Assembly (NCBI RefSeq): GCF_964204865.1
Contig: NC_135250.1
Span: forward strand, 4,030,001 to 4,094,000
DNA length: 64,000 nt
Origin: Styela clava
Lineage: Eukaryota
Reading direction: 5' to 3'
How positions within the stretch are numbered: the stretch's first letter is position 1; each line of letters begins with the position of its first letter. The notes under the pieces were generated by a model. The model made no database searches and was not told the origin of the DNA. It saw only the letters and a program-made list of their open reading frames with translations. The position numbers were made by a program, and so were the translations under genes. Below are positions 3,679-55,586 of the stretch, piece after piece.

Positions 3679-5022
3679 CTATTTATTTTTTGTCATATAG
3701 AAGAAATTTTTCATTGCCACTGCTTTACCGTTGAAAATATGTTCTGTAGTTGCATCTGGCAATTCGGTAATTTCAAAATGATCTCCAAAAATATCACAAA
3801 CCATTTTTGAACATGTGTGATATGCTGGTCCATTGGGGTTAACGAATCCATCAAAATTGAAAGCACAAAGAAGATAACTTGCATCTGTGGTCAGTTTCTC
3901 AGTGATAACATTTGCATATTTTTGCCGTTCTTGGGGTTTTATGACTACTATACTTGCGTAATCCCAAACTGCATCGCACTTTTCAAATTTCAAGCTCGGC
4001 AGATTAAATATGTCTCCTGCATATAATGTGATATCGAGTTCTTCAGACTTTGACTTGAATACCTGAACAAGGATTGATATTTTTTAGATTTCTAAGCGTT
4101 GGGAGCAATAAAATATTATCGGGAGTCATCACAATTATTTCTAGCTATCAATAATGCAATATATTTAGTTGTCTGACCTATTCTACACCAGTCGCTCTGA
4201 ACAAGGCTCCGTACAAGCAGCCACTGATTGCTGCTATAGTTCAGAATGACCAGAAGACGGTTCGGCATTGCCTACCTAATTTAGAGTTGAGAGATTCTGG
4301 CTTGTGGCACCAATATGATTATTTCTGATGCTTCACCCATTAAATGAATGAAAATCTCATGATTTGTTAGACCTAAACCAGTTTATAGCCCACCCATGGC
4401 CCCCTTTCCTGGCTTTTAGCCCTTACGGTAATCAGTTACTCATTCCAGTGGTTTTATAGTGCTATTTTAATTGGTAAATTCCAAATCCCATTATGTTCAA
4501 ACAATTCATGCTCAACAAGGGAAAATACCCTTATTAAGCAATGTCCCATGCTTCACCCACCAAATGAACGAAAATTTCATAACTATCCATATGCATGAAA
4601 CCATGTGAAATTCCTAGACGCACCGAAACATGTTGACGCATTACACTCAATTGAATTAGTAGTAATTCATTTGATTGAAGTTTATGCCTACTTAAAGATG
4701 AAAAGAATACCTTGAAATTACCATCTTGTGCTTCACTAAATTCCATATTATGTTCAACAAAGAATTCTTTTAAAACAGTTTCAGAGCAGTCAAGCCCAAT
4801 GACAGAATGCCCTTTGCTGGCAAGCCATTCCATATCATAAGACTTTGCACATAACGGCACAAGGACACGATACGATTTACCAGAATCAGGAAAAAGCAGC
4901 TTTTCTTGCCTCAGAAGATCTTCATTATATTCCTTTTTCATGTGTTTGGATAATTTCCCTGAATCCCAATGATTGTTCCAATCTTGTGTGGACCATTCCT
5001 GGTTCTTGGGTGGATTTGCCAT
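3679..5022 (-). CDS. TPMT: Thiopurine S-methyltransferase (TPMT) family SAM-dependent methyltransferase, copy 1; 2 exons, about 231 aa
   Basis: Exons 5022-4711 and 4062-3679 joined in phase 0 by a GT..AG intron. Motifs RVLVPLCAKSYDM, GHSVIGLDCSE, ITLYAGDIF, DAVWDYASIVVIKP, YLLCAF. Confidence 0.85.
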
Positions 5023-21500: not shown

Positions 21501-24352
21501 GAACATATGTGAAATAGCTTTTCCGATGATTTGACCGCCTTGCATTGGAACTACACGGGCGACATCTTGGCCAACGCTAACCACAGTAGCTGAAAAGTAT
21601 AAGAACATTTGATAAGAATTGCCAATATTTGCTATAAGCTGTAATTGTCGTCAGGCAAGGAACTACTTACTACTAACAAATTAACCAATAAATTTGAGTA
21701 ATTCGATATTGGTAATACGATAACATTCGAAGGTACTCCTGAAGTATGCGCACCAAGATGTCGCACAACCTGAACCCCAACCTGATACACAACCTGAGTT
21801 CAGGTTGTGCGCCATCTTGGTGCGCATACTTCAAGAGTTCCCATTCGAATAGTAGCTTTCGCCATCAGATGTAACAAAATTCAGTAGTTTCGCATGTGAT
21901 TATTAGCAATATACATGATTTATCGTGTTTTACATGCATTTTCGTGGATTGAATTGTTTCGCAATAATTGATCCGGAGCAAAATCCTGCTCCGTGAAAAC
22001 GAATGGTTTTCAAGATAAAAAAGAAAGAGAGGTGATTTCAACGAGTAATATGAAATCTCCAATCATTTTAAGGCAATTCTCAACAACATTTGTTATTATT
22101 AGTTGACTTCAATTCATCTGTTGATACGTATGTTTATTTATGGGACTAAATTGCATTGTAATCTTAATATCGGAAATAATAAAACATATTAAGGCATTCT
22201 TATGGTCTTTGCAGTTATATCGAGTTAACAGCTATTCCAGTTCAAGCTAGTAACCTATATTATTTTTTTATATTTCGGAGTCAGGTCAGTATATTGCACT
22301 ATAACTGTTAGTTAGTAGCAGTTGTAACATGCAAACGTGGTAGTTAAATGTAACCCGAACTGCAAATTAGATTCTAACCTGTTGTATATCCGTACACATA
22401 TTGACAGAGATAAGCATGTGAGCAAAGGTAAGCGCGAGGAACTTTGATTTTCTCAAAGATGGTTTGCGTCGTTTTCTCTCGAGAAACCTGGTATAAAATG
22501 ATATTCAGTTTAGCGTGGAAAACAAGAAGTATATGAACACGAGAGTTACGCGTCGGTACCGATAGATTCAGGTATTCATTTTCAATATACGATATGAAAT
22601 AAATAAAAGACATGTAACAAATTACAAAAAACGGATATCGGCCTGTTGCAGTATACAAATATAGCAACGGAACAACTGAATATTAAACATTTACTTATTT
22701 AGACACAATCATATTGAAAAGAATACGAAATAAACTACGGATGCCACAATAACTATGGAATATTCCTTAAAGGTTTAGCTTGCCACTTTCTAAAATGATC
22801 GGCGACACATAACGAAATGCCGTGTAAAATGTGATAAATTGTTAGTCAAAATAACGGGCACCATAGGCATCAGAGAAATTTAAAATAACAAATTCAAATC
22901 AATTGATACAGTAGATGCGAAAAAAAGCAATTTTTCACCATGAAGGCCCCGTTACGCTGTTATACATCATTAGAATATCTTTCTTATGTATGCAGTGTCT
23001 GTAATATAAGTGTGTGTAATAGTATGATGAATTAGCTTTCTGTGTTAAAAGTTTAATTGGAATCGCTATCTATGATGTAATTTGTGGCAATGACGAAAAA
23101 TTTTGCGTCACGTTTTTAACACTCTATATATATATATGTGAAAAATTGAGAAACGTACAAACTTCAATTTTCCTGTTACAAACTCTCGAAAATAGGTTAA
23201 ATGGCAAAAACAAATCAAATAATACGCATTCTAGAATATATAGGATTCTAATATCACGTATGAGATTTGCGTTGATTTTTTCGAAAGAGTTTGCCCAAAA
23301 CTATCCTACGTTTATCTATTTGAAAGACCTCGAAGAAATAAGTTATAAATTATAATTCTGAATGAAAATTCAACCATTTTCCCAGTATTGTTAAACTAGT
23401 TAACTTACAATTGGGTTTGTAACAGCCTCTGTCAAAAATACTGATCGTTGCGTTGGGTCTATTCGCAGTTCGTTATAGAAAGAGTGAAACCATATTTTTT
23501 CAATGTCATCCCAGTTTGTAATAATGCCTCCTTCTACAGGACGAGTTGTTTTCTTTAAGATGCTATTTTCGACTACTGCTTCGTCCCCAACGTAAGTGTC
23601 TTTAAGGTGAGATCCTACAATGCCTGGCTAAAATAAAGAAAAATTTGTGAAAAATGTATCAGTAAAATAGCGGATAAATTGAAAAATCACAAAAATAATC
23701 AATCTAGTGTTGTAAAACTCTTGGAATTGTGTTTTCACATCTTGTAAGTGTAAGTGATGTCTTAAAGGTGAGATCCTACAATGCCTGGCTAAAATAAAAA
23801 AAATTTTGTGAAAAATGTATCAGTAAAATAGCTGGTAAATTGAAAAATCATAAAATTAAAAATCAAGTGTTATAAAACTCTTAGAATTGTGTTTTCACGT
23901 CTTTATTGCGAACAATGCTTTGAACAAACAGTCACTGATACATAATGAGATACAATTTTGGAAAGACTATAATCTTTCCGCTTCGACAACCTTTGGCTTT
24001 TCCTACATGGGTCTTGGGTGTAGTTATTGAAAGAGATGGCATGGATGACATGAAGCTGTTTTGAGCTTATCTTGCCCGTCTTGATTTCGATATTTATATT
24101 TGTTTATTTTGGATATTTGCGTTCCACCCACGTATTCTCAACGTGTTGTTGAAACTTTCGCCAGATCCACTGCTCTATACCTTTGATTAATATTTAAAAA
24201 TAGGCCCTTACTTGAACTTTTGGCCGTCCAACAATTGATGGAAATATTGCTCTTGGTGCATCATCACCAGCGAACCCAACCCTCGTCAAACACGATCCTG
24301 TGTCAATCACAACAGCGATGTCAGGATCTTCTCTGGGATCGCAATCGGCCAT
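18526..24352 (-). CDS. Divergent actin / actin-related protein, 7 exons, about 380 aa
   Basis: Exons 24352-24212, 23627-23409, 22487-22379, 21589-21428, 20793-20672, 19667-19493, 18740-18526. All introns GT-AG, total 1143 nt, open frame. Actin motifs [86 protein letters not shown]. Confidence 0.9.
18911..19139. mobile_element. Merlin-like MITE, asymmetric subfamily (actin-like gene intron 6)
   Basis: GGAAC..CGCC ends; perfect 8-bp TSD AAATTTGG. Confidence 0.8.
19209..19310. repeat. 52-bp tandem duplication, each unit with an X-box-like GTTCTTATGGTAAC
   Basis: Units 19209-19260 and 19261-19310 are nearly identical. Confidence 0.85.
20166..20477. mobile_element. hAT-type MITE
   Basis: TIRs CAGCGGTTCTCAACC / GGTTGAGAACCACTG; perfect TSD TCATACAT; degenerate relative at about 5136-5458. 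Confidence 0.85.
21732..21841. mobile_element. Merlin-like MITE, short hairpin subfamily
   Basis: GGTACTCC..GAGTTCC ends; perfect 8-bp TSD CATTCGAA. Confidence 0.85.
23601..23903. repeat. About 140-bp local duplication including the exon-2 acceptor of the actin-like gene
   Basis: 23601-23742 is repeated at about 23762-23903. Confidence 0.85.
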
Positions 24353-24939
24353 GTCTACGGCTGGGTAGTAACCAGTAGTGGGATTCAGCCGGTTTGCACC
24401 GGTTCTATAAATCCGTCTCACGGAATTTTATGAGATAAGCGAACCGGTTAGCAATACTGGTTATTGTCAATGTTCAGTTTGTACAAAAACCGACTGAAAA
24501 ATATTACTGTTGTGATGGAACCAGCTGACAAAAAATTTGAATCTTACCACTGGTAGTAATTCAGAATATTAAGACAGAGAAAAGCTTCGACTTGGCTTGA
24601 CTTAATCCTAGCATCACCTCAATTACGTATCCCAATTCCTAACGCCCATGCCAATCTAAGCTGCGGATCTAATTACACGGTAATCTTTATGAATTAAATT
24701 TATTCATAATAACCCACAATTTTGCCTGGGGTTGTGTTGAGTCCTTACGGTGGTGTCGGGTCGAGAGGGATAGGTACATAACATAAGTCTTATTCACCCT
24801 AGTTGAGATTACCAAACCCGGATTATATCGATGGTTGAATACGATTTGCTATTACTGACTAAGCCTAATTAAGCGATAGACAGGAAGTTAATGATAACTG
24901 AACAGTTCTATTCAATATTGCTGAAGTCTCAAGCTACGT

Positions 24940-25950
24940 ATGAAGTTCGGCACTGTCCTTGTATCTCTGATTTTGTTTACCCTGATACCCTGGTAAGATT
25001 AGATTACTGCCCCACCCTTTTCTGTTTAACCCAACTTGTCCAAAACTAAACAGACTAAAAGAAAGCCGAGTAGAGAATTGGTGACGTGAAAATATCAGGA
25101 TAGTGCAAAAAATACAATTCTAGACCAAAACAAACCACGGGACGTTTTTGACACAATATATATATCTTTTACTTTTTGGCTAACGCTCTTCGTGGTCGAA
25201 GCTTTTACCGTATATCTCCAAAGTAACCCGTGCGAGATGAATTGCCCTCAGAGATACTTTTTTGTTTTACTCCCCACCTAAATAGCTGCAACTTCACAAG
25301 CGATTCGCTATGCGATGATTCGCTAGTATTGTGATCATTCAGCAATACGAAAGCTATGTTTATTTACCTCGCGCGACTGAACACATTACTTCTATGAGCG
25401 GATATGTGAGGAGTGAACAAAAGACTGACGCACTGAACGAACGAAGGGACCATACGTATCGCCGCCTTAATATAATTATCGAAGATGAGTAAAACGCACT
25501 GGTATTTTAGTATGAAAGAAGACGTGAAAATCCGGTAACAGGGCTGCCACCCTCGATAAAGTCGACTGAAAACAATGAAATAAAAAACAATTACAACAAA
25601 CGATTAGTAGCCCCAAAACAGAAACCCAGCAATTTAGAACATAATCCAAAGAGAACATAACTATTGTGAGAAGCGTCCTTGATTAAACTTTTGGGTACAA
25701 TTATACACAGAACATAATAAGTTTAAGTGTTAAATAAATTTTCTTTATTTTCGTAGAGGTAATTAAAGGTTTTTTCGGTCACTCTGCTTTATGCGAAAAG
25801 GCAAGTATACGTCGACGAAGCCATCTGGCAAAACCAGAATTCGCACGTTTAAATAAACAAAACAAAAACTCCGACTCATCAAAATCTAAAAACACAAAGT
25901 ATAGTGATGAAGAATTTACTGGATCAGAAGACCGGATTGTTAATCCGTAA
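24940..25950 (+). other. Candidate small secreted-peptide gene or pseudogene; exon joining unresolved
   Basis: ATG at 24940 encodes MKFGTVLVSLILFTLIP, then a GTAAGA donor. An acceptor at 25757 is followed by about 63 open codons, TAA at 25948-25950 and AATAAA at 25960. Confidence 0.3.
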
Positions 25951-26283
25951 GGACAAAGGAATAAAGTTTTTTTTCGACGTACGGGAAATCTTTTTTGAAA
26001 AAAGTAGTTAATTTTTTCAAAAGGCCACATTATTTGTTACATTTTAGTTGTGATTCGATGGTGGCTGACATTGATTAACCGGAGATAAAAAATATTAATA
26101 CTATTTTAGTAATTCATAATTTAGATATTTCACTTTATCCAAATGCAGGGGGCCGTAGTTTGTCCATCCTTGTTCTAGTAGTCGATGATTTTATACAAAT
26201 TGGCTTAAAAAATAGTCCAAATCAGAATTAAAAGTACATAATCTTCCGATAGAAGCAAGTTGCAAGAGTAATGAAACAAATGA

Positions 26284-27915
26284 TCACTTCTTCGTAAGAT
26301 AGTAATAATGTTCTCTCGCTACTGGTTTCGGTACACCACGGAGGTATCTCTCTCTGTCAACGTCAAGTATAGGTTTTATATTGAATATATCCCCAAACGC
26401 ATCGACAACCATTACAGGTGAATTTGCATACGTTGGCGGTTTTGGATCCATATATCCATTGAAGTCAAACGCACATAACAGATAGTTGACGTCCCTTGTC
26501 GTCTTTTTATTGATGACATCAGCATATTTTCTTCTCTCTTCGGGTTTTATTGCGATAACGCTCCCGTAGTCAAAAACTGCGTCGCATTTTTCGAATGAAG
26601 CACTCGGTAAATTGAAAAAGTCGCCGACGTATAACATGATATTACAGCCCGCTGTTGTCGATTGCAGGATCTAAAAGAACGGAAAATATTGTTAGTCAAA
26701 TTCTATAATTTCAATTTTGTAACGTACATGCACTCCATGAAAATTCTTGTGTGCGCAAATAATGACGAATCGCCGTGAAATACAGGCTAAATATTTTTGC
26801 GTATGTCTGATTTTGGATATGTCCCTACCAATTTCAAGAGAAAAATGTCGTTCTAAAATGTTACGTAAGTAATGTTAGGATAGAATTTTACATATTTATC
26901 CTGGGAGAGGAAAGTCGATAAGACGGCTTATTCATATGGCGAACGACGGCCTCTCGTTCGGTTACCAGTCCATATTGGGTATGGGATTAGGTAGCCAGGT
27001 ATTTGTTTTGGGAGCATGGACTTGATGGCGGAGGAAGCCGTAAACCCGTAACCCACCAGCGTTTACGTTAACCACCCCACGGCGGCGAGGGGTCCATCAA
27101 TCCTCTCACCCATAACTATCCCCGCCTGGAATTCGAACCGCTAGTACGAGGATGTTGGTAAATATTTTCTGCCATTTTATACCACTGACTAGTTATGCTA
27201 CTTAGCAATAATTATCTCAGGATCGTGACTAAAACATCGTCCATTTAGGTCTGCATGAAATCATCACAAATAACGCTAACTTTGTTCTTGAAACAATCGC
27301 CACAAATAAGGGCTATAAAGTCGGAGAAAGTTTGCAACTAAATCCGGGTTAAAAATAATTTGTTGACTCCGACGTCTAAAATTCGGACTCCATAGCCCCG
27401 ACCAGTATTCCCCAGCTTTCTATTTTACGAGGGAGGGGGTTCAAGTCTATGAATCAGTTTAAAAATATACATTTTACTTACGTTAAGTATTGAAGCAAGG
27501 TGTCACACATGAAAATTAAGAGGGGGATGGTGTTTGAAATTTTAGACGGGAAGTCACTGGGCCCCCGACATAAACTCACCTTGAAACTGCCGTCGTTTTT
27601 AACGACGAAAGTCATGCCATGCTCATTAAAAAAATCAGTCAATGCTTTCTCGGAGCAATCCACGCCAATGACGGTATGGCCTTTATCAGCTACCCATTTC
27701 ATATCGTATGATTTCCCACATAACGGAAAAAGCACTCGGTATTTTTTATCCGGTATCGGAAACAGCATTTTTTCACGCTTCAATAATTCGGGGTTGAATT
27801 CATTGAGCTGGAACGGAATAACCGGGGCAGAATTCCAAAATTTCTTCCAATGATCTGTTGTCCAATCGTGGTCCGTGATCATTGGAAGGTCAAGCTTATC
27901 TGTGGATACTGACAT
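26284..27915 (-). CDS. TPMT: TPMT-family methyltransferase, copy 2; 2 exons, about 240 aa
   Basis: Exons 27915-27580 and 26670-26284, phase 0, same intron position as copy 1. Motifs RVLFPLCGKSYDM, GHTVIGVDCSE, DAVFDYGSVIAIKP. Confidence 0.88.
26876..27139 (-). mobile_element. 5'-truncated tRNA-derived SINE in the TPMT copy 2 intron
   Basis: Minus strand begins with B-box GGTTCGAATTCC, has a GC-rich body, and ends in a TTCTATCCTAA tail that recurs at about 43298. Confidence 0.55.
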
Positions 27916-28554
27916 GGTACTAAAGTGAATAATTTACGATTATTTAAACACTGCAATAAAGGCTAAAAATAAACACCAACATTTCAAATGGGATTTGCAA
28001 ATCTTCAAACCCATATGCCGGTAAACTTAGCCTACGTATCAAGTTAATCATAGTACGTCACTGCAACCTATGCGTATCCGTGATAATGCGAGGCTTGTAA
28101 GTCTTTACTCATTACTGTGTCCAATCATCACTTTTTACCATTTAAAAAAAAATTGTAAGTGTAAAGACGAATTTATTTTATATTTCATAATCGACATATA
28201 TGTACCTCAAAAAATCTGTTTCCCAAACTGTTTCTCAGAAGGTCACTAAACTTGCCGTGCTGCCCCAAACTTACAGGATGTGTACAGGGATTTGCATCGT
28301 CGGCGTTTGTGTTTCAATTAGTGCTGAGCAACTTCGAACATTGACGATTTCAGTTAGCATCTTCTATGACGCTATAATGCCCGTTTCGTAGGTCGAAAAA
28401 GTGCCGTTGCGACCTATCTGTGTTCCGAAACGCCCAGCCCTAGTCACAAATAATAGTTCTTCACAATAATGATAGAGCTCTATTGGCCTTCACACTTTTG
28501 AAATGATGGCATCGTTTCTACAGTTTTTCGTCTGCGTTTCCAAAGCCTATTTAT

Positions 28555-31262
28555 TCCGTATCAGGTTGTGTAAAATGTCACAAACTGAATAGCAGATTTT
28601 ATTTGGGACAATTTACCTTCACTCATGGGTTTCGCTGCTGGCGTTTTAAAATTTTCCGTCGTCATTTCAGTACCCTATCTGCAATTTTAAGGAGGTTGGA
28701 ATCTTTGACTGTGCTTGAGTTTTCACTCATTTATATTAAATGACTCGAACTGGCGTACTCAACTATCTGCCGGAGGAACTGGACTCAATAATCGAGTCGC
28801 CAGTTGCTCAAGGTTTAAGGTTTTTAACACAGCTAATCGAATCTATCAAATGTTATCTTTAATAGCCCAAAAACCAATGCGATTTAGCTGCTAACGTTTT
28901 TAAATGCCGATGAAGACCGTATCTGTGCCCTATGGTATCATAAAACCTCAGTTTTGTAATGATATCATTTATAATTCATAATTAACTTCTTACCAGTCAT
29001 TTATAATTGTCCGGAAGTCGTATATTGGCAAAGTTCCCGAGAATTGAAAAATGTATGTTGCGTGCAAAATTAACCGAAATGCTTATTATTACGCCGAAGT
29101 CAGGCTGATTGATTTGGTTAATTAACAATAAAACTAGAAATAACTTTTACGATAAGTATGATATTGGCATGACGAATTTGCATAGGACAGCTCAATTATA
29201 GTATATAGAAAAACAAAAAAAATTGTTTAAGCAGCTATTTATTTTTACAATGAAGAACTTTTTTAGAGGCATATGTTGTATTACACAGAATATTACTTAA
29301 ATCAAATAGAACCTAAAAGATAAAAAAGGTATCGAAAAATTGAAAAGTAAGCTCTCATTTTATTCGTGATCCAATCTGACCTTCAAATTGTCTGCTTTTC
29401 AACGACCATATTGACGTATATCATTGTATATAATAACAAAACCAAATAAAAACAAGAAATACAATGAATCAAATGACCTTTGGTTTCATATTTTACTCTT
29501 TACGTTTAGTCTAGTATTAATTACAATAATTTGTTGTCTGGAAAATCAATCGCACAAAAACAATTATGTTAATAATAACGAAGATGCAGTTTCCCTCTAA
29601 GAAAATGTTACACTGAGCAAATGTTTATTTTACTGAGCATGAATATTTTAAGGCTGAGCAGAGTCTTAAATGATTTACAAACTATGTGAAATATTACATC
29701 AGTATAATATTTTATAAGAATGCGAACGAGATACACATTTAACTCGAAAACATGGAATGAGTATTCCAGCTAGGCGTTAGAAAATATGACGAGTCACGCT
29801 TTGAAATCGTACTGGCACAAGTGCGCGAAAATGAAATTCTATTGCGTAAATGGTCTGGTTGCAATGCGCACCTCAGATGGAACCTTGGCGAAAACTCTTT
29901 TGTCAATAAATACGAAGAAAATTTAGATAGACAGAATATTGAAAAAATCATTATGCGACAGCATGTCTGTAATGAGTCACTAAAATCCGTTTTGCCTGGT
30001 TTTAAATAATAATTTAAAATTTAAATAATTGTTGTGTAAATCCTTATATCAAAGAAGTTAAATTAGTCCTGAATTGTTGATGCGTGCCTTTTCCGATAAT
30101 AAATAATGTAAATAGAGTTTGATAAATAACAAATTTCCGCAACACAATAAACGCACAACGATTATTTAAATTTTAAATTATTATTTAAAACCAGGCAAAA
30201 ATGCCCAAGGATTTTAGTGGCTCATTACAACCATGCTGTCGAAAAATGTATTTTTTATTATTCTGTCGGACTAAATTTTCTGCGTATTTGTTGACAATAG
30301 AGTCTTCACTCTTCGCTATCATTAACATAATTATTTTTTGTGCGATTGATTTTCCAGAAAACAAATCAATGCAATTAATACTAGACTAAACGTAAAAAGT
30401 CGAACATGAGACCTAGTCTTTTTTTATTTTATTTGGTTTTGTAATTATATACGTCAATAGGGTCGCTTAAAGGTGGAAATTTGAATGTCAGACGAAATCA
30501 TGAATAAAATGCGTGCTTGCTATTCTGTCGAATATAACACATACCTTTAAAAAAGTTATTCGTTGTGAAAATAAATAGCTGTATGACAAATATTTTTGTT
30601 TTTCTAACGATTAACCCTATATATATATACGATAATTGAGCAGTCGTATGCGAATCAGTCATGCCAGTATCATATTTAATGTAACATTTGTTTCTAGTTT
30701 TTTGGTAATTAAAAAAAATCAATCACTATGACTTCGGCGTAATATTTAGCATTTCTGATAATTTTGCACGCAACATACATTTTTTTAATTCTCGGGAACT
30801 CTGCCAATAAATCGACTTTCGGACAATTTCATAAAGGATAGGTAAGATGTTAATTATGAAACATAAATGATTTTGTTACAAGACTGACTATGGTTTTATG
30901 ATATCATAAGGTACAGATGCGGTCTTCATTTAAAAGCGTTAGCAGCTAAATCGCATTGGATTTTGGGCTATTAAAAATACCATTTGAAGGATGCGATTAG
31001 CCGTGTTGTGTTAAAGTCCGTGAACCGTGAGTCTCGATTCAAGTATCTCTGGCGGATAGTTGAGTATGCGAGTCCGAGTCATTTAATACAGATGAGTGGC
31101 AACCGAGTCAAAGATTTCAACTTCCTTAAAATTGCAGATTAGGTACTGAAATGACAACGGACAATTTTTTTTGCGCCAGAAGCGCGACCCAGGACTAAAG
31201 GTAAATTGTCACAAATAATATGTGCTATTGAATTTGTTACATTTTACATAACTTGATACAAA
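28555..31262. repeat. Large diverged inverted repeat (palindrome): arms about 28555-30036 and 30154-31262, spacer about 117 bp
   Basis: Reverse-complement matches along the arms, e.g. 29990 TTTTGCCTGGTTTTAAATAATAATTTAAAATTTAAATAAT vs 30161-30200, and 28558 GTATCAGGTTGTGTAAAATGTCACAAA vs 31233-31259. Confidence 0.92.
29587..29887. mobile_element. About 300-bp hAT-like insertion present only in the left palindrome arm
   Basis: Arm alignment breaks at about 29586 and resumes at about 29888; ends CAGTTTCCCTCTAAG / CTCAGATGGAACCTTG are imperfect TIRs. Confidence 0.55.
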
Positions 31263-31491
31263 ATGGATGTTTCCCCTACCCTTCACACAAGAAAAATGTT
31301 CTCTATACTTTACCATTGCAAAATTCTTAACACTTATTTTGAGACTGGTATAATTAGTACTCCGAATTTTGTGTGGGCTTAGAACGGATTGAGGGCATTT
31401 ACGGTTAAAATGTTTCTACTTACGAAATTTTTTTACGAAGGGGCTTCAGAATGGAATTACTTTTCGCGGGTAGAGTCTCTACTGTACTTTT

Positions 31492-31601
31492 GAAGCTCCA
31501 GAAGTATGTGCACCAAGATGGCGCACAACCTGAACATGGTATGTGTACCAGGTTAGGGTTCAGGTTGTGCGCCATCTTGGTTTAAATACTTCGGGAGCGC
31601 C
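31492..31601. mobile_element. Merlin-like MITE, short hairpin subfamily
   Basis: Hairpin with CAAGATGGCG; TSD GTACTTTT / GTAGTTTT. Confidence 0.75.
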
Positions 31602-32954
31602 GTAGTTTTCTTGTTGAGGGGTCGCGAATATCTGTAAATGTTGATTTTACGAAAATGGGGGTCGCGAAAAAAAAGTTTGGCAACTACTGGCATAGACTGA
31701 CTGCCACATTGGTCGTTCTATTATTTATGTGTTTACTTATTATCTTTTTTTTTAAACGTTTTGTAACTTCGGAAAATCCCAACATTTTTTTTTATCTGTG
31801 ATTCTTTTCCTTCCATAGTGTTACCAAAGCCGTTTTATATTGGCTCTGGTGTTACCACAAAACGTTTTGTGAGGCAAAGAGACGAACAAATTTTGTGCTG
31901 CTGATAATCGAGTATTATTTCGCATTCATACACAAATATAGGAAACACGAAACTGATAAATAACAATCAATCAATCGTTTATTTGTCATCACAAAAACAA
32001 GTTCAAATAAAACCGTAAATAAATAGAATAAAACTGATGCAATGAATACCTCCTATACAGTAGGCTACTAATTATGTTATTTGTGTGACCGGAGTCGCGA
32101 CCTAAGAAGATCTTCAAGCAGCGACGCCTACATCGATGTTACAGGTTAGAATAAAAAGTAACATGAATGAGGGATAAAATATATAAATCCTAAGAATGAG
32201 TCAACGAATGATGCAAATACAGTTGCGACATTAGAAATATTTGAAATTATGATACATGGTTAAACATATTTATGGTTAAACTAGGAATATGTAAATTATA
32301 TTGGAATAAGTACTAATAAGCATGCGAATAAAAATCATAGAAAAGGCAAATTTGGCGTAATATACAACTAAAAACCAGGCAAGGCAAACCCTAACACAAA
32401 AATGTTTACTGCAGATGCAATTTGGAGGCTCATACAATCAATACAAAAATTGATAGAGTCTAATGAAAGTTACAAACAAACTATTATATCTAGATAATTT
32501 TGGCAATAAAGAGATAAAACGATCAAATCATTTAAAAAAAAAATAGCAAACGTAGATTGAAGGCAATAAATAAACTATCGTGCTCCACTCTAAACGATTT
32601 TGAATCAACTATCAATATAGCAGATATTCTCGGATTCCGACTCCTTGCACCTATTTTCGTCTGCGAAGCTTGGCTGTTGAGGAGTGGGCGGTCCTTCGAA
32701 ACGAAAACGAGCTATTGTTTTCAACCCTATTTGTATAAAAGAGTGTCCGAGCGGCTGCACAACATTTGAATTAGAAATCACTATTGTTAACTTATGGTTG
32801 TGTGGTCATTATTACAGAAATAAAAATGTAGTGTAAACTCGTAGAAATATCCATTGGGGTTCAACCGTGGCTCTTGTTTTATTTGCTTCCAAGATTACGG
32901 GTAAAAATTTGTTTTGACCTTCACAGATTTTTTAATGCCTTGACCCTAGTTACC

Positions 32955-34346
32955 ATGGCAGGACCGTTAGATAAGCAAGGCATCGTTGTGTTAGACCAAG
33001 TTTGGACTATGGAAGACTGGGATAAATTTTGGAATTCTGCAGCGGATATTCCGTTTCAGATCAATGATTTTAATCCAGAATTGTTAAAGCTCGAAAAAAT
33101 GCTTTTCCCCATACCAAATAAGAAATACCGGGTGCTTTTTCCACTATGTGGGAAGTCATATGATATGAAATGGGTAGCGGACAAAGGGCATGGTGTCATT
33201 GGCGTGGATTGCTCCGCGAAACCGTTGGAAGATTTCTTCAATGAACATGGCATAACATATGTCGAGAAGCAAGAAAGTAGTTGCCAGGTAAGTTGCTGTT
33301 GGGGTCGTGTAGTCTGTACACGAAGTGTCCTCCGGTATGGCTTGTTTCGCTACAATGTTGTTGTGAAAAATACAAAGATCGATGAAGCCATTAGAGAATA
33401 TTACTTTTATTTTGTTCAAACTGACTCTGAGTCGATCAAGACCCCATAAATTTGCTTTTTCATTTTTGTCTTATATTTCAGCATTGCCCCTTGAGTATTA
33501 TTACACAAGGTAAGCTTTGCTTAAGTATAGCATACCTGATGAATAAAAATACAATTTAAAAAAATAACAAGTTTAGTCACTATACGATGACATTATTTAA
33601 AATTAAATAAGTGTTTCGTTTATTTGTTTTATAGTTTCGGTTGTCATCGAGCTAACAGTGTCCTACTTGTCCCAAGGTCGTGAAAATTGGCATATAAGTG
33701 AACTATAGGCCTACCTGATTAAAATGAAGTATTGCAAATTACAATTTATATAAAATATTCCTAAATTTAAAAATTTGAATGGCGATAACATGCTTTAAGA
33801 TATACCGGTATCGATCCGATATTGTCACACCTATATTTCAAAATTCATTGCTGGGAATGAAATGAGTTTCATGACCAACGTAGGAACGAGATTTGACAAG
33901 TTATGCGTAAGAAATGAGTCAAATAGCTACATTTCTTGACAATCATTTTATGACTCTATTTTAGGTGCTGCAGTCGACAACTGAGGGCTGTAATATCACA
34001 TTGTACGCTGGGGACATTTTCAATCTACCAGATTCAGCATTCGAGAAATGCGACGCAGTTTTTGACTACGGGAGCGTAATTGCAATAAAACCAGAGGAGA
34101 GAAAAAAATATGCTGATGTCATGAACAAAACGACGTGACGTCAGCTATCTGTTATGCGCGTTTGATTTCAATGGATATATGGATCCAAAACCGCCAACGT
34201 ATCCAAATTCACCTGAAATGGTCACTGTTGCGTTTGGGGATATATTCAATATAAAACCTCTACTTGACGTAGACAGAGAGAGATACCTTCGTGGCGTACC
34301 TACACCTATAGCGAAAGAACTATATTACTATCTTACAAAGAAGTGA
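32955..34346 (+). pseudogene. TPMT: TPMT-family methyltransferase, copy 3, with a 5-nt deletion frameshift in exon 2
   Basis: Exons 32955-33287 and 33965-34346 closely match copy 2. Copy 2 reads AATAAAAAGACGACAAGGGACGTC where copy 3 reads AACAAAACGACGTGACGTC, giving an in-frame TGA at 34136-34138. The homologous C-terminus continues in another frame to TGA 34344-34346. Confidence 0.8.
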
Positions 34347-35449
34347 ATGTATATCCGTCTTGGTTGCTTCATCTGGTCAATTGCAACTTTTCCTCTGTCG
34401 GTACATTCACTTCCAGTTTAGAGTTGGATACATTTTGAGGGTCATCTGTATAAAATCATCACCCAGAATAAGGATGGGCTAATTATGGCACGAAGCACCA
34501 AAGCATTTTGTGCGCCTCCTGCTCTCGGAGAAAATCCCTTGCAACTAGACCTACATACAAATTTATATTACTACTAAAATAACTAAACATTGAATTATCA
34601 AAATGATATTATTTTTTTAATCTTCGCAATCTTCAATTTTAACTCCAACAATTTCAGTCACCATTAAATCAATTTGCAACCAAAACACACCATATATTTT
34701 ACTTGTGCTCGGTAGCTAAAATATCATTATATTTTGACTATTCGAATATATATTGGGATGAACTCTATATATGAATTTAAAAAAATCATGTAATATTTGA
34801 AGTGTATGATCCTGAAGCTAAAGTTGCAACGTAAGCTTCTGGTTGAGAGCGTTTTACTCATCTTCAATATATTAATGGTGGCAACGCGCAGTATGCCTGC
34901 CCGTATGTTTTGTGCGTTTATGCCACATTCAAAGTAAAATATATAAAAACTCATGATTTCCGCCTACCAGTGTAGTTGAATTTGCAAAGTGACTACTTTA
35001 GCATTTACTTGTTCATACAATGAGTTTACTCAACTTGATCCACAGCCCTTGAGTCCAAATCATGTGGAATGAATATTTTATGAATTTTTAATACCGGTGA
35101 ATGGAATTATCAATGTTCATTTGGCGATTTTTTCAACAACGTCTTGAAATACTTTTATTGATGTATATAGCTACTATACCGACTAACTCCATCATAACAT
35201 AACTGTGGAGGTACAGTTATGCTACAAACCAAATGTTACAAAATCTGAAGCAGCATATGCCAAAATCCAAGTTCCAGTAGTTTTAATAGCATAATCTTAT
35301 GTTGTAATTAAGGGATTATGTTAATCAGCTATTGCAACTGTGTTGTTTTTATACTCTTGTTATTTCACCATAACAGTGTTGTGTCATACTGACCCGTTTC
35401 ATATTATTAGTTCATTTTATTTAAATATTTGTAATATGCTTTCTTTTCT

Positions 35450-35730
35450 ATTTTCTGCATAAATTGCCTCATTGTAGTTTTGTACCATGGTGACTTAAAT
35501 TTCTATAATTGAGTGACTTCTATATTCTGCACGAATTGCTTTATTTTAGTATTGTGTGACTACATAATTTAGTGACTTTCAAATTCTGTGTGAACTTCCT
35601 TATTGAACAGTTGTGACTTCTATATTCTGCATGAATTGCCTGATTGCAATACAGAACCGTTGTGGCCTCAAATTTCTGTAAATTAGTGATTTTTATTACT
35701 GTATCTTCTGCAAGAATTGAGTATTTGTAA
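35450..35730. repeat. Degenerate tandem repeat (GTGACTTCTATATTCTGCAyGAATTGC core)
   Basis: About five irregularly spaced copies of the core. Confidence 0.6.
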
Positions 35731-36132
35731 CGTACTGTAATTACCTGGTTTAGTGACCTTTTAATATAGATACATTTTATTCATATTTTCTTCATGTATC
35801 AATTCGTCACCAGCCTTCAGGAATCACAGAACCATGCATCCCTCAAACTTTGCAACCCAGCTTGCCCTATCCGGCCCCAGTTACATTACTGTTACCCTTA
35901 AACATACTTATGCCAGAAACAATGTTAATATTTCAGCGTAAGCTCTTCACTTTAATTAGATTTTTCACTTTGTCTTTTTACTCTTGTATGACCACAATGT
36001 TAGACTTTTCATATGTGTCACCGCTGCCAGTAATGCATTTTTTCTCCTCTTACCTCGTTCTGTATGCACAGTGTGTATTTCTAATATGGTGATAAAATAA
36101 ACTACCGATTACCTCTGTATTAGTCTTTCGTT

Positions 36133-36437
36133 CGCATATGTGTTATTCCTAATATGTGTCGCATATGTGTTATTCCTAATATGTGTTGCATATGTGTTAA
36201 TCCTAACCCCCACATGACTATGTCACCAAAAAATTACTTCATTACGACGCCACAATAGCGTAAAGAATACCTCCAAAGTGTACCGATGGTATGAGAGACT
36301 GCTGGCGTTAATGAGAACGGTATCGTCGGCGCAGATGCCATCTCGGACGATGATAGCTATACTTGCCAAGCTCTGTAACGTGATTGTGACGTAATTTTGG
36401 ATGACATAGTCAGGCAGGGCTAGGAATAACACATACA
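36133..36437. mobile_element. MITE-like element with about 50-bp TIRs and a triplicated 27-bp left end
   Basis: CGCATATGTGTTATTCCTAATATGTGT occurs about three times; ATGTGTTAATCCTAACCC..TGACTATGTCA is the reverse complement of TGACATAGTCA..GGGCTAGGAATAACACAT. Confidence 0.65.
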
Positions 36438-36875
36438 AAATTTGTTATGCTACGCCTACCACAAGTACTTGTGGTACTAAACTATACTAGACCCCAAAAT
36501 TTAAAGAGATTCCACAGATAATTACATTGAACAAATTCAAATAATTTATACTGATATATGTGATTACTTAGCAGAAATGTTTCATTTCATGGCAAAGGTA
36601 CACATTGAAGATATAACTGACATTAATTTACTTTGATTTCCCAAGTTAAGAAAACAATCAATCATATTAAATTTGAAAAGAGTAAGAGTACTGCATAATA
36701 TTTTTACCACTATGACTAAAATACACTCTGATGCGATTTCTGCTCTTCTGAGACTGGATATGCCTCATTTCTCTCTTTTTTCATAGCTTTTATATTCATA
36801 TATAAATATATTTACTGTATCAACCCTCATTTCTGTATTTAGATTCTATGAATTTTACAAAAATAAAACAACAAC

Positions 36876-38273
36876 ATGTTGTTACAAAATAGCCGTCACA
36901 TTCAATCGTACGTGTATTTTCAAAATTCATTTCGCTTCATCAGTGGATACAAGAATAATCCAGAGAATATTCGAATTGATAAACATCCATCCAATGTTAC
37001 AGAAGAAGACTTGGAACGTCAGCGAATCAAACTTGCTATTGCTAGAAAAGCAAAACCAAAGATCTCTGGATTTAACAAGATTACATATATGAGGTTGTTC
37101 AAACAGGCTGAAGGACTAGACCCCAATGCACAATACAGGAACAGGCCTGATCTTCCGACTTACAGAAGCATTAAACGATATTTGGAAACTGCGGAGCGTG
37201 AACGGAGAAAACAAAGAGATGAGGGAGTGTGGTGGAAAACACTGGATTACTGGATAAAAGAACGGGAAGGAATGAATGATAAACTGAATGATATTGGACA
37301 TGAACTGCTGAAAGAAAAAAGGGGTTATAAAATCAGGAGTAAAAATAAAATCGACCCTGAGTTGGAAAAGGCAGCGAGAGAAAGAACTCTAATACTAGAT
37401 TGTGATGAAATTCTTTGTGAATGGGAGAAAAGTAATATAGGGATTCGTCATATTAAAGAAATTGCGCATTACTATAATATTTATAAAGATCTTTTCAAGG
37501 ATTGTGATTTTCATCCTGTTTTACATATGGATGTGGATTACGAATGTGAAAATGAACTTTCAAATCCTGTGTTTTACGGTAACGAGTTGCTGCCAAGTGA
37601 AGTCGCGTCTGCTCCTACGATTACATTTCAACCAAAAGCTGATAAATTGTACACATTGCTCCTGACTAACCCAGATGAGCATTTAGAGGACAATGATAAA
37701 GAATATGTCCACTGGCTTGTTGGGAATATTCCAGAAGGTGATGTGTTGAAAGGAGATACTATAGTTGATTATTTACAACCCATTCCAGCTCGCGGCACGG
37801 GTTATCAACGCATGATTTTCGTACTGTTCGAACAGTCTGACAAAATTGATTTTATTTCAGAACAAAGAGAAGCGCCATGTACATTACTACGAGAACGTGA
37901 TTTTTCAACTTTTGAGTTTTATAATAAACACAGTGCTCAAATAACTCCAGTATCTTTACGATTTTTTCAATGCAAATGGGATTTTACTGTAAAGAACACT
38001 TTTCATCATGTGTTAAAAATGGAAGAACCAGTATATGAATACGAAAAACTCAGCGAAAGGGAGAGACTTAGTGCTCTTACAAATAGACCCGATGGAAAAA
38101 CACTGCAATGGCTTGCAAGGTTTATGCCAAAAGAAATGGTTTATCCCGATGGCAGTCCAGAGGCTGAGAAACTAAAACGGCAAGCTGCCCAAGACGCCTC
38201 TCGTGCAGTTGAAAACCCAAACCATTCTCGGAGGCGCCTTGTTGATCCTGTGTATGTGATGGGCAGAATATGA
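36876..38273 (+). CDS. MRPL38: Mitochondrial ribosomal protein mL38 (PEBP domain), single coding exon, 465 aa
   Basis: ELEKAARERTL, IAHYYNIYKDLF, PVFYGNEL, TLLLTNPDEHL, EYVHWLVGNIP, YLQPIPARGTGYQR, LRERDFSTFEFY, FFQCKWD, MEEPVYEY. Confidence 0.93.
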   Translation: MLLQNSRHIQSYVYFQNSFRFISGYKNNPENIRIDKHPSNVTEEDLERQRIKLAIARKAKPKISGFNKITYMRLFKQAEGLDPNAQYRNRPDLPTYRSIKRYLETAERERRKQRDEGVWWKTLDYWIKEREGMNDKLNDIGHELLKEKRGYKIRSKNKIDPELEKAARERTLILDCDEILCEWEKSNIGIRHIKEIAHYYNIYKDLFKDCDFHPVLHMDVDYECENELSNPVFYGNELLPSEVASAPTITFQPKADKLYTLLLTNPDEHLEDNDKEYVHWLVGNIPEGDVLKGDTIVDYLQPIPARGTGYQRMIFVLFEQSDKIDFISEQREAPCTLLRERDFSTFEFYNKHSAQITPVSLRFFQCKWDFTVKNTFHHVLKMEEPVYEYEKLSERERLSALTNRPDGKTLQWLARFMPKEMVYPDGSPEAEKLKRQAAQDASRAVENPNHSRRRLVDPVYVMGRI

Positions 38274-40654: not shown

Positions 40655-41920
40655 TTATAAGATAATTTGATTCTTTGTGCATGATTTCAAGTCCTTTCCT
40701 GGAAGTACAATTGCATTTAAAACTACAATTTCCGATTCAACATTCACGTTACCACCAAGGACAGTTATGGAAGGGCTTAGTTTTCCTTCATGGTCGAAGA
40801 GACTACCACTGACTATTTTTGCAAAAGGAGCATTTGGGTCTGGTTGTTGTGCTGTGCCTTCAACTCTGGTCCATTCCCCTATTGTAGATTTCCAACCAAT
40901 GATGCTGTTTAGCACACAGCTATGATTTGACAAATTCACCTCATTAAGAATGATAGAATTTCGAACTCTGACCCCAGCACTGATGCGTACATCAGCACAG
41001 ATTGTGACATTGGGGCCCAGAAGTGCAGTGGGGTCAATCTTAGCCGAAGGGTGAATGAAAACATCCCCGATAATCATCGGGCCTCCTTCCTCACTTTTTG
41101 CGAGCCGATGAGGATGGGTTTTATGATATAACGATAGATACAGCTTGTTGGCATACACTGCGGATGCAGCAGACTTTATTTGGCTCCACATTGAAGTTGT
41201 TTGGTATGCATAAAGCGACCCCAAGTCGGTCAAAGGCATGATGATGTCTTGTTCAAGGCTGAGTGAGAGGGAATCTGAAAATACTCCTTGAGCGTACATT
41301 TCTTCTTGATTTCGTAAAACGGCTTCAGCAAGCATCCCGAATATTTTTGTTGAAAAGAGATACACTCCACAGTTTATTAAAGGACTCACAAATGATTCTG
41401 GTTTTTCAACATAATGTGTAACTTCTTTCGTTTCCTCATTTTCAACCAAGCATCCATAAAACATTGATTCCTTTGAAGGGACGTTAGTTGCTAAAATCGT
41501 CGAGCTGTTCGACGGTGACGCATATTTCAAATGAAATTTGAGCATTTCTGATAACGGAAAATTACAACAAACGTCCGAATTCATGACAAAAATGCCAGAT
41601 GGATTTCCCGCCATAATTTGATCTCTAAAATGATACAATCCACCCCCAGTTCCCATTTGTGAAAATTCTCTCAAATAACGTATACTGATATTGAACTCTT
41701 TACGACAATGATTTATAAAGTTCTTTAGATTTTCATCTTCTGGAAAAAATCCAATCAAAATAATTTCCTGTAGATTTGGAACTGCGACACAGGCCTCAAT
41801 GTGGTGTTGAATCATCGGAACGCCAGCGACTGGAAACAAAGGTTTTGGTTGGTTGAGAGACAAAGGTCGAAAACGAGTTCCTTTGTCCGGCCCACCAATC
41901 AGAATTACTGCTTTCCACAT
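40655..41920 (-). CDS. GMPPA: Mannose-1-phosphate guanylyltransferase regulatory subunit alpha, single coding exon, 421 aa
   Basis: KAVILIGGPDKGTRFRPLS (alpha-type insertion versus the beta-type GGYGTRLRP), GTGGGLYHFRDQI, HYVEKP, WSQIKSAASA, hexapeptide repeats, C-terminus NQIIL. Confidence 0.95.
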   Translation of the reverse strand: MWKAVILIGGPDKGTRFRPLSLNQPKPLFPVAGVPMIQHHIEACVAVPNLQEIILIGFFPEDENLKNFINHCRKEFNISIRYLREFSQMGTGGGLYHFRDQIMAGNPSGIFVMNSDVCCNFPLSEMLKFHLKYASPSNSSTILATNVPSKESMFYGCLVENEETKEVTHYVEKPESFVSPLINCGVYLFSTKIFGMLAEAVLRNQEEMYAQGVFSDSLSLSLEQDIIMPLTDLGSLYAYQTTSMWSQIKSAASAVYANKLYLSLYHKTHPHRLAKSEEGGPMIIGDVFIHPSAKIDPTALLGPNVTICADVRISAGVRVRNSIILNEVNLSNHSCVLNSIIGWKSTIGEWTRVEGTAQQPDPNAPFAKIVSGSLFDHEGKLSPSITVLGGNVNVESEIVVLNAIVLPGKDLKSCTKNQIIL

Positions 41921-55204: not shown

Positions 55205-55291
55205 ATTTATTTTACTCTGACAAGGAAAGATGAAGAGCGAACCGTATGTAAAAGCAGCGAACTTCCAACTGAAAGTAAAATGGATGGATCT

Positions 55292-55305
55292 GTTGCCATG
55301 GCAAA
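55292..55305. promoter_or_regulatory. RFX X-box in the RSPH9/RPUSD2 divergent promoter
   Basis: GTTGCCATGGCAAA is 13/14 identical to the palindromic X-box GTTGCCATGGCAAC and lies 88 bp upstream of the ATG of a motile-cilia gene. Confidence 0.75.
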
Positions 55306-55586
55306 GGTTCCGGTCCGGCAATTCAACCTTTGACTTTAAAATATTACGTCATTATAACATAGAAAATGATATATTTTGCGCCGTTTTTGACAAATATCAC
55401 AATGTAAGTTGAAAAATATACCAATTTATTTATTAATTGCATATTTAATAATAACACATTCATACTATACTCATAAGAATGTCTCATTGCTATACCGCAG
55501 CCGCATGTGGCACATCTGCCCCACAGTGAGTGTGAATGCAAGCTGTAGTTATTGCACGAGACGACATTCGCTCTTTGCATCGTCAA

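What the first reader, a model, noticed from the sequence alone, without database searches (positions are those of the whole stretch)
26040..34680. Fold-back inverted duplication: two TPMT-like genes head-to-head around a 2.7-kb palindrome
Seen: 28555-30036 and 30154-31262 are diverged reverse complements around a spacer of about 117 bp. Further out, exon 1, exon 2 and the 3' flanks of TPMT copy 2 (minus) and copy 3 (plus) mirror each other out to about 26040 and 34680. The proximal upstream regions and introns align poorly, while the distal non-coding arms still align clearly. Known: short-spacer palindromes arise by fold-back/template switching and can undergo arm-to-arm gene conversion. Inference: an 8.6-kb palindromic gene duplication. 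The persistent central arms suggest conversion, a shared regulatory element or hairpin-RNA potential. Alternative: an independent long-TIR foldback transposon between the genes.
Basis: partly seen in the sequence, partly recalled or inferred. Interest (0 to 1): 0.75.

Follow-up and report, generated by a model that had tools for sequence, protein, structure and literature searches.

The report
Mirror-image TPMT gene pair in sea squirt
Two copies of a methyltransferase gene in a sea squirt genome face each other around a 2.7-kb mirror-image stretch of DNA, an old inverted duplication partly re-homogenised later, which is a tidy but ordinary kind of gene duplication.

Summary
Two two-exon TPMT-family genes (copy 2 minus, 26284-27915; copy 3 plus, 32955-34349) lie head-to-head around a palindrome with arms 28559-30036 and 30154-31259 and a 117-nt spacer.

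The arms occur nowhere else in the 377-Mb assembly, apart from embedded small repeats. They have no tandem subrepeats and no visible target-site duplication, so a foldback transposon is unlikely. A ~300-bp MITE present only in the left arm explains the unequal arm lengths.

Divergence is mosaic:
- central arms: K80 0.13-0.23
- exon 2: Ks 0.28-0.61
- 3' flank: K80 0.45
- exon 1: Ks about 1.2
- introns and proximal upstream DNA: no more alike than shuffled sequence

My best reading is an old inverted duplication followed by patchy gene conversion between the copies. A later second fold-back of the intergenic DNA cannot be excluded.

RNA-like contigs show copy 3 spliced as predicted and none on the unique arm sequence. 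The window's copy 3 has a 5-bp frameshift deletion. The three organism-A runs laid, and a Styela clava database protein, carry the intact form.

This is a new member of a known kind, of low to moderate interest. The scan noted these TPMT genes before (s1-810873), and many foldback transposons elsewhere in this genome.

The parts
3682..5022 (-). TPMT-family copy 1. Exon 1 is 5022..4711 and exon 2 is 4062..3682. It has the same intron position and serves as the outgroup paralogue.
   Evidence: tblastn; exon ends; 43-61% aa identity to copies 2 and 3 by piece
26133..26283 (-). 3' flank of copy 2. It mirrors 34350-34537.
   Evidence: K80 0.45 (0.34-0.60) over 215 aligned columns
26284..26670 (-). 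Copy 2 exon 2 (128 codons plus stop)
   Evidence: Pfam PF05724 E 9.6e-13; identical to the database protein P0001
26671..27579 (-). Copy 2 intron (GT..AG). It holds an abundant ~265-bp dispersed repeat at about 26875-27139.
   Evidence: no similarity to the copy 3 intron above shuffles
27580..27915 (-). Copy 2 exon 1 (112 codons, ATG at 27915)
   Evidence: PF05724 E 4.7e-21; matches PDB TPMT chains at E 1.9e-15
27916..28558 (.). Proximal upstream DNA of copy 2, not mirrored. It holds a ~105-120-bp dispersed repeat at about 28338-28458.
28559..30036 (.). Left arm of the central palindrome. It includes a shared ~200-bp dispersed repeat (29206-29409) and a left-arm-only MITE (29587-29887).
30037..30153 (.). 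Unique, non-palindromic 117-nt spacer
30154..31259 (.). Right arm of the central palindrome. The mirror of the shared repeat lies at about 30465-30612, and the empty site of the MITE at about 30309/30310.
31260..32954 (.). Proximal upstream DNA of copy 3, not mirrored. It holds a very abundant MITE (31495-31598) and a ~700-bp dispersed repeat (about 31964-32672). RNA-like contigs cover about 32681-32937.
32955..33287 (+). Copy 3 exon 1 (111 codons)
   Evidence: PF05724 E 4.2e-19; covered by RNA-like contigs in X5 and X9
33288..33964 (+). Copy 3 intron. It holds a ~190-bp dispersed repeat at about 33658-33844.
   Evidence: splice joint in an X5 contig, 33285/33963 with cut +2, GT..AG
33965..34349 (+). 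Copy 3 exon 2. In this assembly it carries a 5-bp deletion near 34134 relative to copy 2, which shifts the frame.
   Evidence: five letters are put in there in X1, X5 and X9; the intact 239-aa database protein is P0002
34350..34537 (+). 3' flank of copy 3. It mirrors 26133-26283.

Best explanation
This is an old head-to-head inverted duplication of a two-exon thiopurine-S-methyltransferase-family gene. The organism is Styela clava or a very close relative. After the duplication, non-allelic gene conversion between the inverted copies re-homogenised some segments at different times. The latest event covers the 1.1-1.2-kb intergenic arms next to the 117-nt spacer. An earlier one covers exon 2 with its 3' flank. 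Exon 1, the introns and the proximal upstream DNA kept diverging.

Shown: the geometry, the uniqueness of the arms in the genome, the mosaic of divergence, the later MITE insertion, and the splicing of copy 3.

Inferred: conversion as the cause of the mosaic, and fold-back or template switching as the original mechanism.
For: Geometry.

Both genes are TPMT family. Four of the five exon pieces tested exceed Pfam's cut-off, and the splice model of copy 2 equals the database protein P0001.

The arms are locus-specific. Own-genome searches with 28555-30036, 28555-29584 and 29888-30310 matched, outside embedded repeats, only the two arms.

Mosaic divergence:
- arms: K80 0.13-0.23 with overlapping intervals
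- 3' flank: K80 0.45
- intron and proximal upstream DNA: 44% identity, against 43% for shuffles
- with repeats masked: best local scores 19.7 and 21.1 bits, against shuffled maxima of 18.3 and 22.6
- Ks between copies 2 and 3: 1.16 in exon 1, 0.61 in exon 2a, 0.28 in exon 2b
- synonymous differences in exon 1 versus exon 2b: Fisher P = 0.0005

Constraint does not explain exon 2b. Against copy 1 it is as diverged as any piece (Ka 0.47), yet between copies 2 and 3 it is the least diverged (Ka 0.08). Exon 1 gives 0.41-0.44 and 0.18.

The transposon-derived piece inside the arms is about as alike (K80 0.23) as the rest. That points to shared recent ancestry, not to selection.

Literature, passages read:
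- Gene conversion is reported between adjacent inverted paralogues, for example the C. elegans hsp16 inverted repeat around 416 unique bp (PMC3966223).
- Head-to-head pairs make up about 10-21% of linked duplications in four of the animals tabulated (PMC3194840).
Against: One genome cannot separate conversion from a second, later duplication of the intergenic DNA.

The arms look like one age with sharp edges. A single discrete event of either kind fits that.

The arms show no raised G+C, as biased conversion might leave: 0.33-0.35 against about 0.35 for the window.

The synonymous-site counts are small (36-64 sites per piece), and Ks in exon 1 is near saturation.

The lower divergence of exon 2 and the 3' flank could partly reflect constraint on UTR or synonymous sites.

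No read spanning the centre was seen.
Confidence: 0.55

Rival explanations
1. Two separate events. An old inverted duplication made the head-to-head genes. Much later, a second fold-back or template-switch duplication copied about 1.2 kb of the intergenic DNA in inverted orientation next to itself. No conversion is needed for the arms.
For: The arms have one roughly uniform age (K80 0.13-0.23) and sharp edges, beyond which similarity drops to background within 20-40 nt. A 117-nt spacer is typical of fold-back events. This is my general knowledge; of PMC7467729 and PMC10622511 I saw only the abstracts.
Against: It leaves the lower divergence of exon 2 and the 3' flank relative to exon 1 and the intron unexplained. 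After subtracting repeats, the palindrome centre lies roughly midway between the two start codons: about 1760 against about 2050 bp, my arithmetic. A second event need not produce that.
Confidence: 0.25
2. The arms are kept alike by selection because they work as a pair. They could be a source of hairpin RNA or small RNA, or a shared regulatory or structural element for the two divergent genes.
For: The central 423 nt fold into a near-perfect hairpin: -177 kcal/mol against -69 for shuffles, z = -20.8. The innermost 47 nt are 98% complementary. The arms are more alike than exon 1.
Against: Any inverted repeat folds like this. The two RNA-like runs laid (X5, X9) show zero depth on the unique parts of the arms: bins 28200-29199, 29800-30399 and 30600-31199. 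The transposon-derived segment is conserved about as well as the rest, and indels are frequent: 56 gap columns against 619 aligned columns in the outer arm. A MITE insertion into one arm was tolerated. Rfam matched nothing in the arms. The mirrored small ORFs (29821-30009 +, 30185-30364 -) differ by eye at about a third of their residues although the DNA is 88% alike.
Confidence: 0.08
3. A foldback or long-TIR transposon inserted between two genes that were already head-to-head.
For: First-stage notes list many foldback transposons in this genome (unchecked notes). The palindrome has sharp outer edges.
Against: There is no other copy of the unique arm sequence or of the centre in 377 Mb. No target-site duplication appears at 28558/31260. 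The arms hold no tandem subrepeats, and no transposase-sized ORF is present. Arms that are 12-20% diverged would make it a very old, orphan element.
Confidence: 0.05
4. An assembly artefact, such as a fold-back chimeric read or a mis-join, created the palindrome.
For: No listed contig spans the centre. Fold-back artefacts in long reads are described (PMC12870357, abstract only).
Against: The arms differ by 12-20%, by many indels and by a MITE. Artefacts give near-identical arms. X1 contigs identical to the window tile most of both arms, and all 30 bins have depth. Both genes exist as separate S. clava database proteins.
Confidence: 0.03

Closest known systems
Adjacent inverted paralogues with gene conversion, for example the C. 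elegans hsp16-1/hsp16-48 3.8-kb inverted repeat around 416 unique bp (PMC3966223, passages read)
   Same: It is a small, gene-bearing inverted repeat around a short unique spacer. Conversion is invoked to explain segments that are more alike than their surroundings.
   Different: There the modules are 100% identical. Here the youngest segment is 12-20% diverged and lies in intergenic DNA, not in the genes. Conversion is long past and patchy.
Large sex-chromosome palindromes kept by arm-to-arm conversion (Rozen et al. 2003, seen only in reference lists; PMC6790999, abstract only)
   Same: Two inverted arms carry paralogous genes around a unique spacer.
   Different: Those arms are far larger and, by my recollection, over 99% identical. 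This one is 8.4 kb, with arms 80-90% alike at best and mostly decayed. I do not know whether piece C1 is a sex chromosome.
Fold-back inversions / inverted duplications primed by hairpins at breaks (PMC7467729 and PMC10622511, abstracts only)
   Same: An inverted duplication with a short spacer is the expected product.
   Different: Those are fresh somatic or laboratory events. Here the junction is old, and no short priming inverted repeat can be identified.
Foldback transposons, noted by first readers elsewhere in this genome (s1-822938, s1-823067 and others)
   Same: Long inverted arms around a short middle.
   Different: The arms are single-copy, with no subrepeats and no target-site duplication.

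Membership tests
Palindromic (inverted) gene duplication | Two arms in inverted orientation around a short unique spacer | tested here: met
   The spacer 30037-30153 is unique and not self-complementary.
Palindromic (inverted) gene duplication | Arms carry paralogous genes with the same exon structure | tested here: met
   Copies 2 and 3 have two exons each, with the intron at the same codon boundary. Both hit PF05724.
Palindromic (inverted) gene duplication | Locus-specific, not a dispersed repeat | tested here: met
   Three own-genome DNA searches matched only the two arms outside embedded repeats. Only three close TPMT copies exist, all in this window. The tool scores only the best 40 candidates, so this is not an exhaustive count.
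Palindromic (inverted) gene duplication | Arm-to-arm gene conversion (concerted evolution) | tested here: inconclusive
   Mosaic divergence supports it.
Foldback / long-TIR transposon | Several copies in the genome | tested here: not met
Foldback / long-TIR transposon | Target-site duplication at the outer ends | tested here: not met
   The flanks at 28558 and 31260 share no direct repeat. An old duplication could have eroded.
Foldback / long-TIR transposon | Arms built of tandem subrepeats. This trait is as I recall it for Foldback elements and as first-reader notes describe them in this genome. | tested here: not met
   TRF found only two 15-nt AT-rich arrays in the arms.
TPMT family (Pfam PF05724) | Match above Pfam's gathering score | tested here: met
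   Scores were 75.9, 48.7, 69.5 and 44.1 bits against a cut-off of 26 for four exon pieces. The 73-aa C-terminal piece of copy 3 gave none. PDB TPMT chains match exon 1 at E 1.9e-15.
TPMT family (Pfam PF05724) | Catalytic and SAM-binding residues, and enzyme activity | not tested
I did not examine it.
Hairpin-RNA (hpRNA) locus | Transcript through both arms and small RNAs from them | tested here: inconclusive
   No RNA-like contig lies on unique arm sequence in the two runs laid, X5 and X9. These are contigs only, and no small-RNA data were available.

The most novel reading that the evidence does not exclude
The central 2.7-kb palindrome is not a mere relic. It is kept as a hairpin-forming element between the two divergent TPMT-like genes. 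It could be a source of endogenous small RNAs, or a structural or regulatory element whose pairing is selected. That would explain why it stays 80-90% alike while the introns have been randomised.
Probability: 0.07. Interest if true: 0.55.

Novelty: new member of a known kind. Interest (0 to 1): 0.25.

Why it matters
The locus is a compact, well-resolved example of how an inverted gene duplication ages. Segments of at least three apparent ages sit side by side within 8.4 kb, and datable transposon insertions fall before and after the last homogenisation.

It could serve as a small test case for conversion between inverted paralogues in a highly polymorphic chordate relative. It does not open a new question.

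For annotation, it shows that the frameshift in copy 3 of this assembly should not be read as a fixed pseudogene.

Tried and rejected
Foldback transposon: rejected on copy number, absence of a target-site duplication and absence of subrepeats.

Known RNA family or tRNA in the arms: none.

Coding arms:
- Only ORFs of 46-74 aa are present.
- The mirrored pair near the centre differs, by eye, at about a third of its residues although the DNA is 88% alike.

Introns unalignable only because of repeat turnover: rejected. With repeats masked they still score at the level of shuffles.

Biased-conversion G+C signal: not seen.

Paralogue letters in alleles:
- Eight of the 14 differences I checked in copy 3's exons carry copy 2's letter. 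That does not separate ancestral polymorphism from micro-conversion, so I draw nothing from it.
- The X1 differences in exon 1 have the same depth (11.6) as the copy 2 contig laid across in the opposite strand. They are probably cross-laid paralogue sequence, not a second haplotype.

Organism B run X8:
- It holds pieces about 99% like the left arm only, at low depth.

Literature:
- No held paper has both 'Styela clava' and 'thiopurine'.
- None of the 12 papers listed mentions Styela clava.
- I opened no supplements.

The joined spliced model was never searched. Exons were searched apart. The splice model was checked only by reading it against P0001.
Full report
**1. Observation**

The repeat finder on 24000-37000 reported 16 inverted pairs.
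- Twelve of them tile 28553-30036 against 30154-31264. The innermost is 29990-30036 / 30154-30200: 47 nt, 98% complementary, 117 nt apart.
- Three more pair 27563-27873 with 32994-33304 (78%) and 26284-26699 with 33936-34346 (81-90%).
- The sixteenth (31495-31598) is a separate small palindromic element.

Self-blastn confirmed this: 28558-29584 against 31259-30310 gave 73% over 1062 columns with E = 0. It also confirmed the two exon-bearing pairs. The window holds no N.

**2. The genes**

tblastn of the ORF translations found three related copies in the window. Exon ends were read from the alignments and the translation.

| Copy | Strand | Exon 1 | Exon 2 |
|---|---|---|---|
| 1 | minus | 5022..4711 | 4062..3682 |
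| 2 | minus | 27915..27580 | 26670..26284 |
| 3 | plus | 32955..33287 | 33965..34349 |

- All three have the intron at the same codon boundary.
- Searched exon by exon, four of the five pieces hit Pfam TPMT (PF05724) at 44-76 bits against a cut-off of 26.
- Exon 1 of copy 2 matches solved TPMT chains at E 1.9e-15.
- The whole assembly holds only these three close copies. Distant family members lie on C9 (three in tandem), C2 and C5.

A protein search with the open frame that starts at copy 2's ATG returned two database proteins, both named thiopurine S-methyltransferase-like of Styela clava.
- P0001 (240 aa) reads exactly as my two exons of copy 2 laid end to end.
- P0002 (239 aa) corresponds to copy 3.

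So the organism is S. clava or a very close relative. An earlier agent's note had already called this genome Styela. I never searched a joined spliced model.

**3. Is the arm a transposon?**

The window is G000:C1:4030001-4094000 of a 377-Mb, 380-contig assembly. I ran three own-genome DNA searches.
- Left arm, 28555-30036: 47 matches. Positions 1-1030 and 1336-1482 matched only the right arm. Positions about 1033-1333 (window 29587-29887) matched dozens of loci.
- Arm without that piece, 28555-29584: again only the right arm matched full-length. A second small dispersed repeat showed up at 29206-29409, and it lies mirrored in both arms.
- Centre, 29888-30310: it matched only itself, on both strands.

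The tool scores only the best 40 candidates, so these are not exhaustive counts. Even so, no second locus shares unique arm sequence.

Further points against a transposon:
- Aligning the left arm, the right arm and three genomic copies shows a ~300-bp element with terminal inverted repeats inserted cleanly in the left arm. The right arm keeps the empty site. This explains the unequal arm lengths and places that insertion after the arms' last common ancestry. The shared repeat was there before.
- The arm edges are sharp at 28559 and 31259, and the flanks show no direct repeat.
- TRF found no subrepeat structure.

First-stage notes describe many foldback transposons in this genome, with satellite-built arms and target-site duplications. 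This palindrome has none of those traits.

**4. Divergence profile**

A global alignment of the two halves, read outward from the centre, gave these figures.

| Segment | Identity in 100-column windows | K80 (where computed) |
|---|---|---|
| Central arms | 72-91% (80-91% in all but two) | 0.13 (inner 147 nt), 0.20, 0.23 (shared repeat), 0.18 (outer 619 nt); intervals overlap |
| Exon 1 | 72-85% | 0.29 |
| Exon 2 | 73-90% | 0.15 |
| 3' flank | 58-74% | 0.45 |
| Proximal upstream DNA | 43-64% where aligned | about 1.1 |
| Introns | 40-52% | about 1.0 |

- Intron and proximal upstream identity overall is 44%, against 43 ± 1.5% for shuffled controls.
- The unaligned regions do hold repeats private to one copy: 26875-27139, 28338-28458, 31495-31598, 31964-32672 and 33658-33844.
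- With those masked, the best local alignments score 19.7 and 21.1 bits. The shuffled maxima are 18.3 and 22.6. The arm positive control scores 525 bits.

**5. Coding divergence**

Nei-Gojobori counts between copies 2 and 3 were made piece by piece, and only the numbers were pooled.
- Overall: pS 0.44, Ks 0.66, Ka 0.13, Ka/Ks 0.20.
- The pieces differ. Ks is 1.16 in exon 1, 0.61 in the first half of exon 2 and 0.28 in its second half.
- Synonymous differences in exon 1 versus exon 2b give Fisher P = 0.0005.

Copy 1 serves as an outgroup.

| Piece | Ka against copy 1 | Ka between copies 2 and 3 |
|---|---|---|
| Exon 1 | 0.41-0.44 | 0.18 |
| Exon 2a | 0.23-0.27 | 0.10 |
| Exon 2b | 0.47 | 0.08 |

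Exon 2b is as diverged as any piece against copy 1, yet the least diverged between copies 2 and 3. So its likeness between copies 2 and 3 is not stronger constraint.

The locus therefore shows at least three apparent ages:
- arms at about 0.18
- exon 2 with its 3' flank at about 0.3-0.45
- exon 1, the introns and the proximal upstream DNA at 1 or more

**6. Reading**

Selection is a poor explanation for the arms.
- A transposon-derived stretch inside them is about as alike as the rest.
- Indels are frequent.
- A MITE insertion was tolerated.

Shared recent ancestry explains them better. Patchy gene conversion between the inverted copies accounts for both the arms and the exon 2 segment, and I rate it at 0.55. 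A later, separate fold-back duplication of about 1.2 kb of intergenic DNA explains the uniform age and sharp edges of the arms equally well. It does not explain exon 2, and I rate it at 0.25. One genome cannot separate the two.

Conversion between adjacent inverted paralogues is documented, for example C. elegans hsp16 (PMC3966223, passages read). Head-to-head pairs are a regular share of linked animal duplications, at about 10-21% in four of the animals tabulated (PMC3194840, passages read).

**7. Reads**

One run search and one laying were allowed. I laid four of the 15 runs listed on 28200-34199: X1 (DNA-like, best holder), X5 and X9 (guessed RNA, from two studies) and X8 (organism B). All are contigs.

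For my reading:
- An X5 contig of 1202 nt covers copy 3's exon 1 with 5 other letters in 353. It carries the joint 33285/33963 (cut +2, GT..AG), which is my splice model.
- X9 contigs cover both exons.
- X1 contigs identical to the window tile most of both arms, and all 30 bins have depth.

Against, or neutral:
- No listed piece spans the centre.
- X5 and X9 have zero depth on the unique parts of the arms (bins 28200-29199, 29800-30399, 30600-31199). Their depth in the arms sits on the embedded repeats.
- The X5 contig over 32052-32697 lies on the ~700-bp dispersed repeat, so it cannot be assigned to this locus.
- RNA-like contigs at 32681-32937 (X5) and 32708-32897 (X9) suggest a 5' UTR that begins more than 1.4 kb from the arm.

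**8. The frameshift**

Against copy 2, the window's copy 3 lacks 5 bases in exon 2 near 34134. The frame then shifts and meets a stop.
- In all three organism-A runs laid, each of which covers that place, five letters are put in there: X1 at depth 7.88 of 7.88, X5 at 8.39 of 8.39, X9 at 76.9 of 76.9.
- The X1 contig carries letters at 34108, 34125 and 34130 that are not copy 2's. It is therefore a copy 3 allele and not cross-laid copy 2.
- P0002 is intact at that point.

The deletion is thus either a haplotype of the assembled animal or a consensus error. It is not evidence of a fixed pseudogene.

**9. Other checks**

- The central 423 nt fold as a long hairpin (z = -20.8), as any inverted repeat would.
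- Rfam and ARAGORN found nothing in the arms.
- The neighbours are ordinary genes: Sec63/DnaJ, a PEBP-domain ORF, a GMPP-type nucleotidyl transferase and a radial-spoke fragment.

**10. Verdict**

The structure is a decayed, locus-specific palindromic gene duplication with a mosaic of ages. It is a new member of a known kind, and I score its interest at 0.25.

The boldest reading the data allow is a selected hairpin element or small-RNA source. I put that at about 0.07.

The decisive comparison is the same locus in other assemblies and species.

Noticed in passing
window 31495-31598: A 104-bp palindromic MITE (41-nt arms, 90% complementary) has at least ten more copies or fragments in this window. 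Summed contig depth in the bin 31400-31599 is 145,471 in X1 and 9,854-41,896 in the RNA-like runs. It gives a sub-threshold Rfam match to mir-559 (44.7 bits against a gathering score of 95).
   Followed up: partly
window 29587-29887: A ~300-bp element with terminal inverted repeats has dozens of copies in the genome at 72-90% identity. It sits in the left arm only, and the right arm keeps the empty site.
   Followed up: yes
window 34125-34140: The 5-bp deletion in copy 3's exon 2 in this assembly is not seen in any of the three organism-A runs laid, all of which cover the place, nor in the S. clava database protein P0002. It may be a consensus error or a null allele.
   Followed up: partly
G000:C9:18372358-18376041: Three distant TPMT-family matches lie in tandem on the minus strand, each inside an open frame of 237-241 aa. 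They appear intronless, unlike the two-exon genes of this window. Single further matches lie on C2 and C5.
   Followed up: no
window 28452-29811: Run X8, labelled as a different organism (B), holds low-depth contigs about 99% identical to the left arm. It holds none on the right arm's unique parts or on copy 3's exons. The reason is unknown: a close relative, a mislabel or a mixed sample are all possible.
   Followed up: no
window 29821-30009 (+) and 30185-30364 (-): Mirrored open frames of 62 and 59 aa read towards the spacer from both arms. By eye, about a third of the residues differ although the DNA is 88% alike, so they look like chance frames.
   Followed up: partly
window 33086-33194: In RNA-like runs X5 and X9, the few differences from the window in copy 3's exon 1 (5 and 4 places) all carry copy 2's letter. 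In exon 2, only 3 of the 9 places I checked do. This may be ancestral polymorphism or micro-conversion.
   Followed up: partly
window 8513-10732, 36876-38273, 40655-41920, 54788-55321: The long ORFs of neighbouring genes carry these Pfam domains: DnaJ plus Sec63, PEBP, nucleotidyl transferase with a GMPPB C-terminal domain, and radial spokehead.
   Followed up: partly
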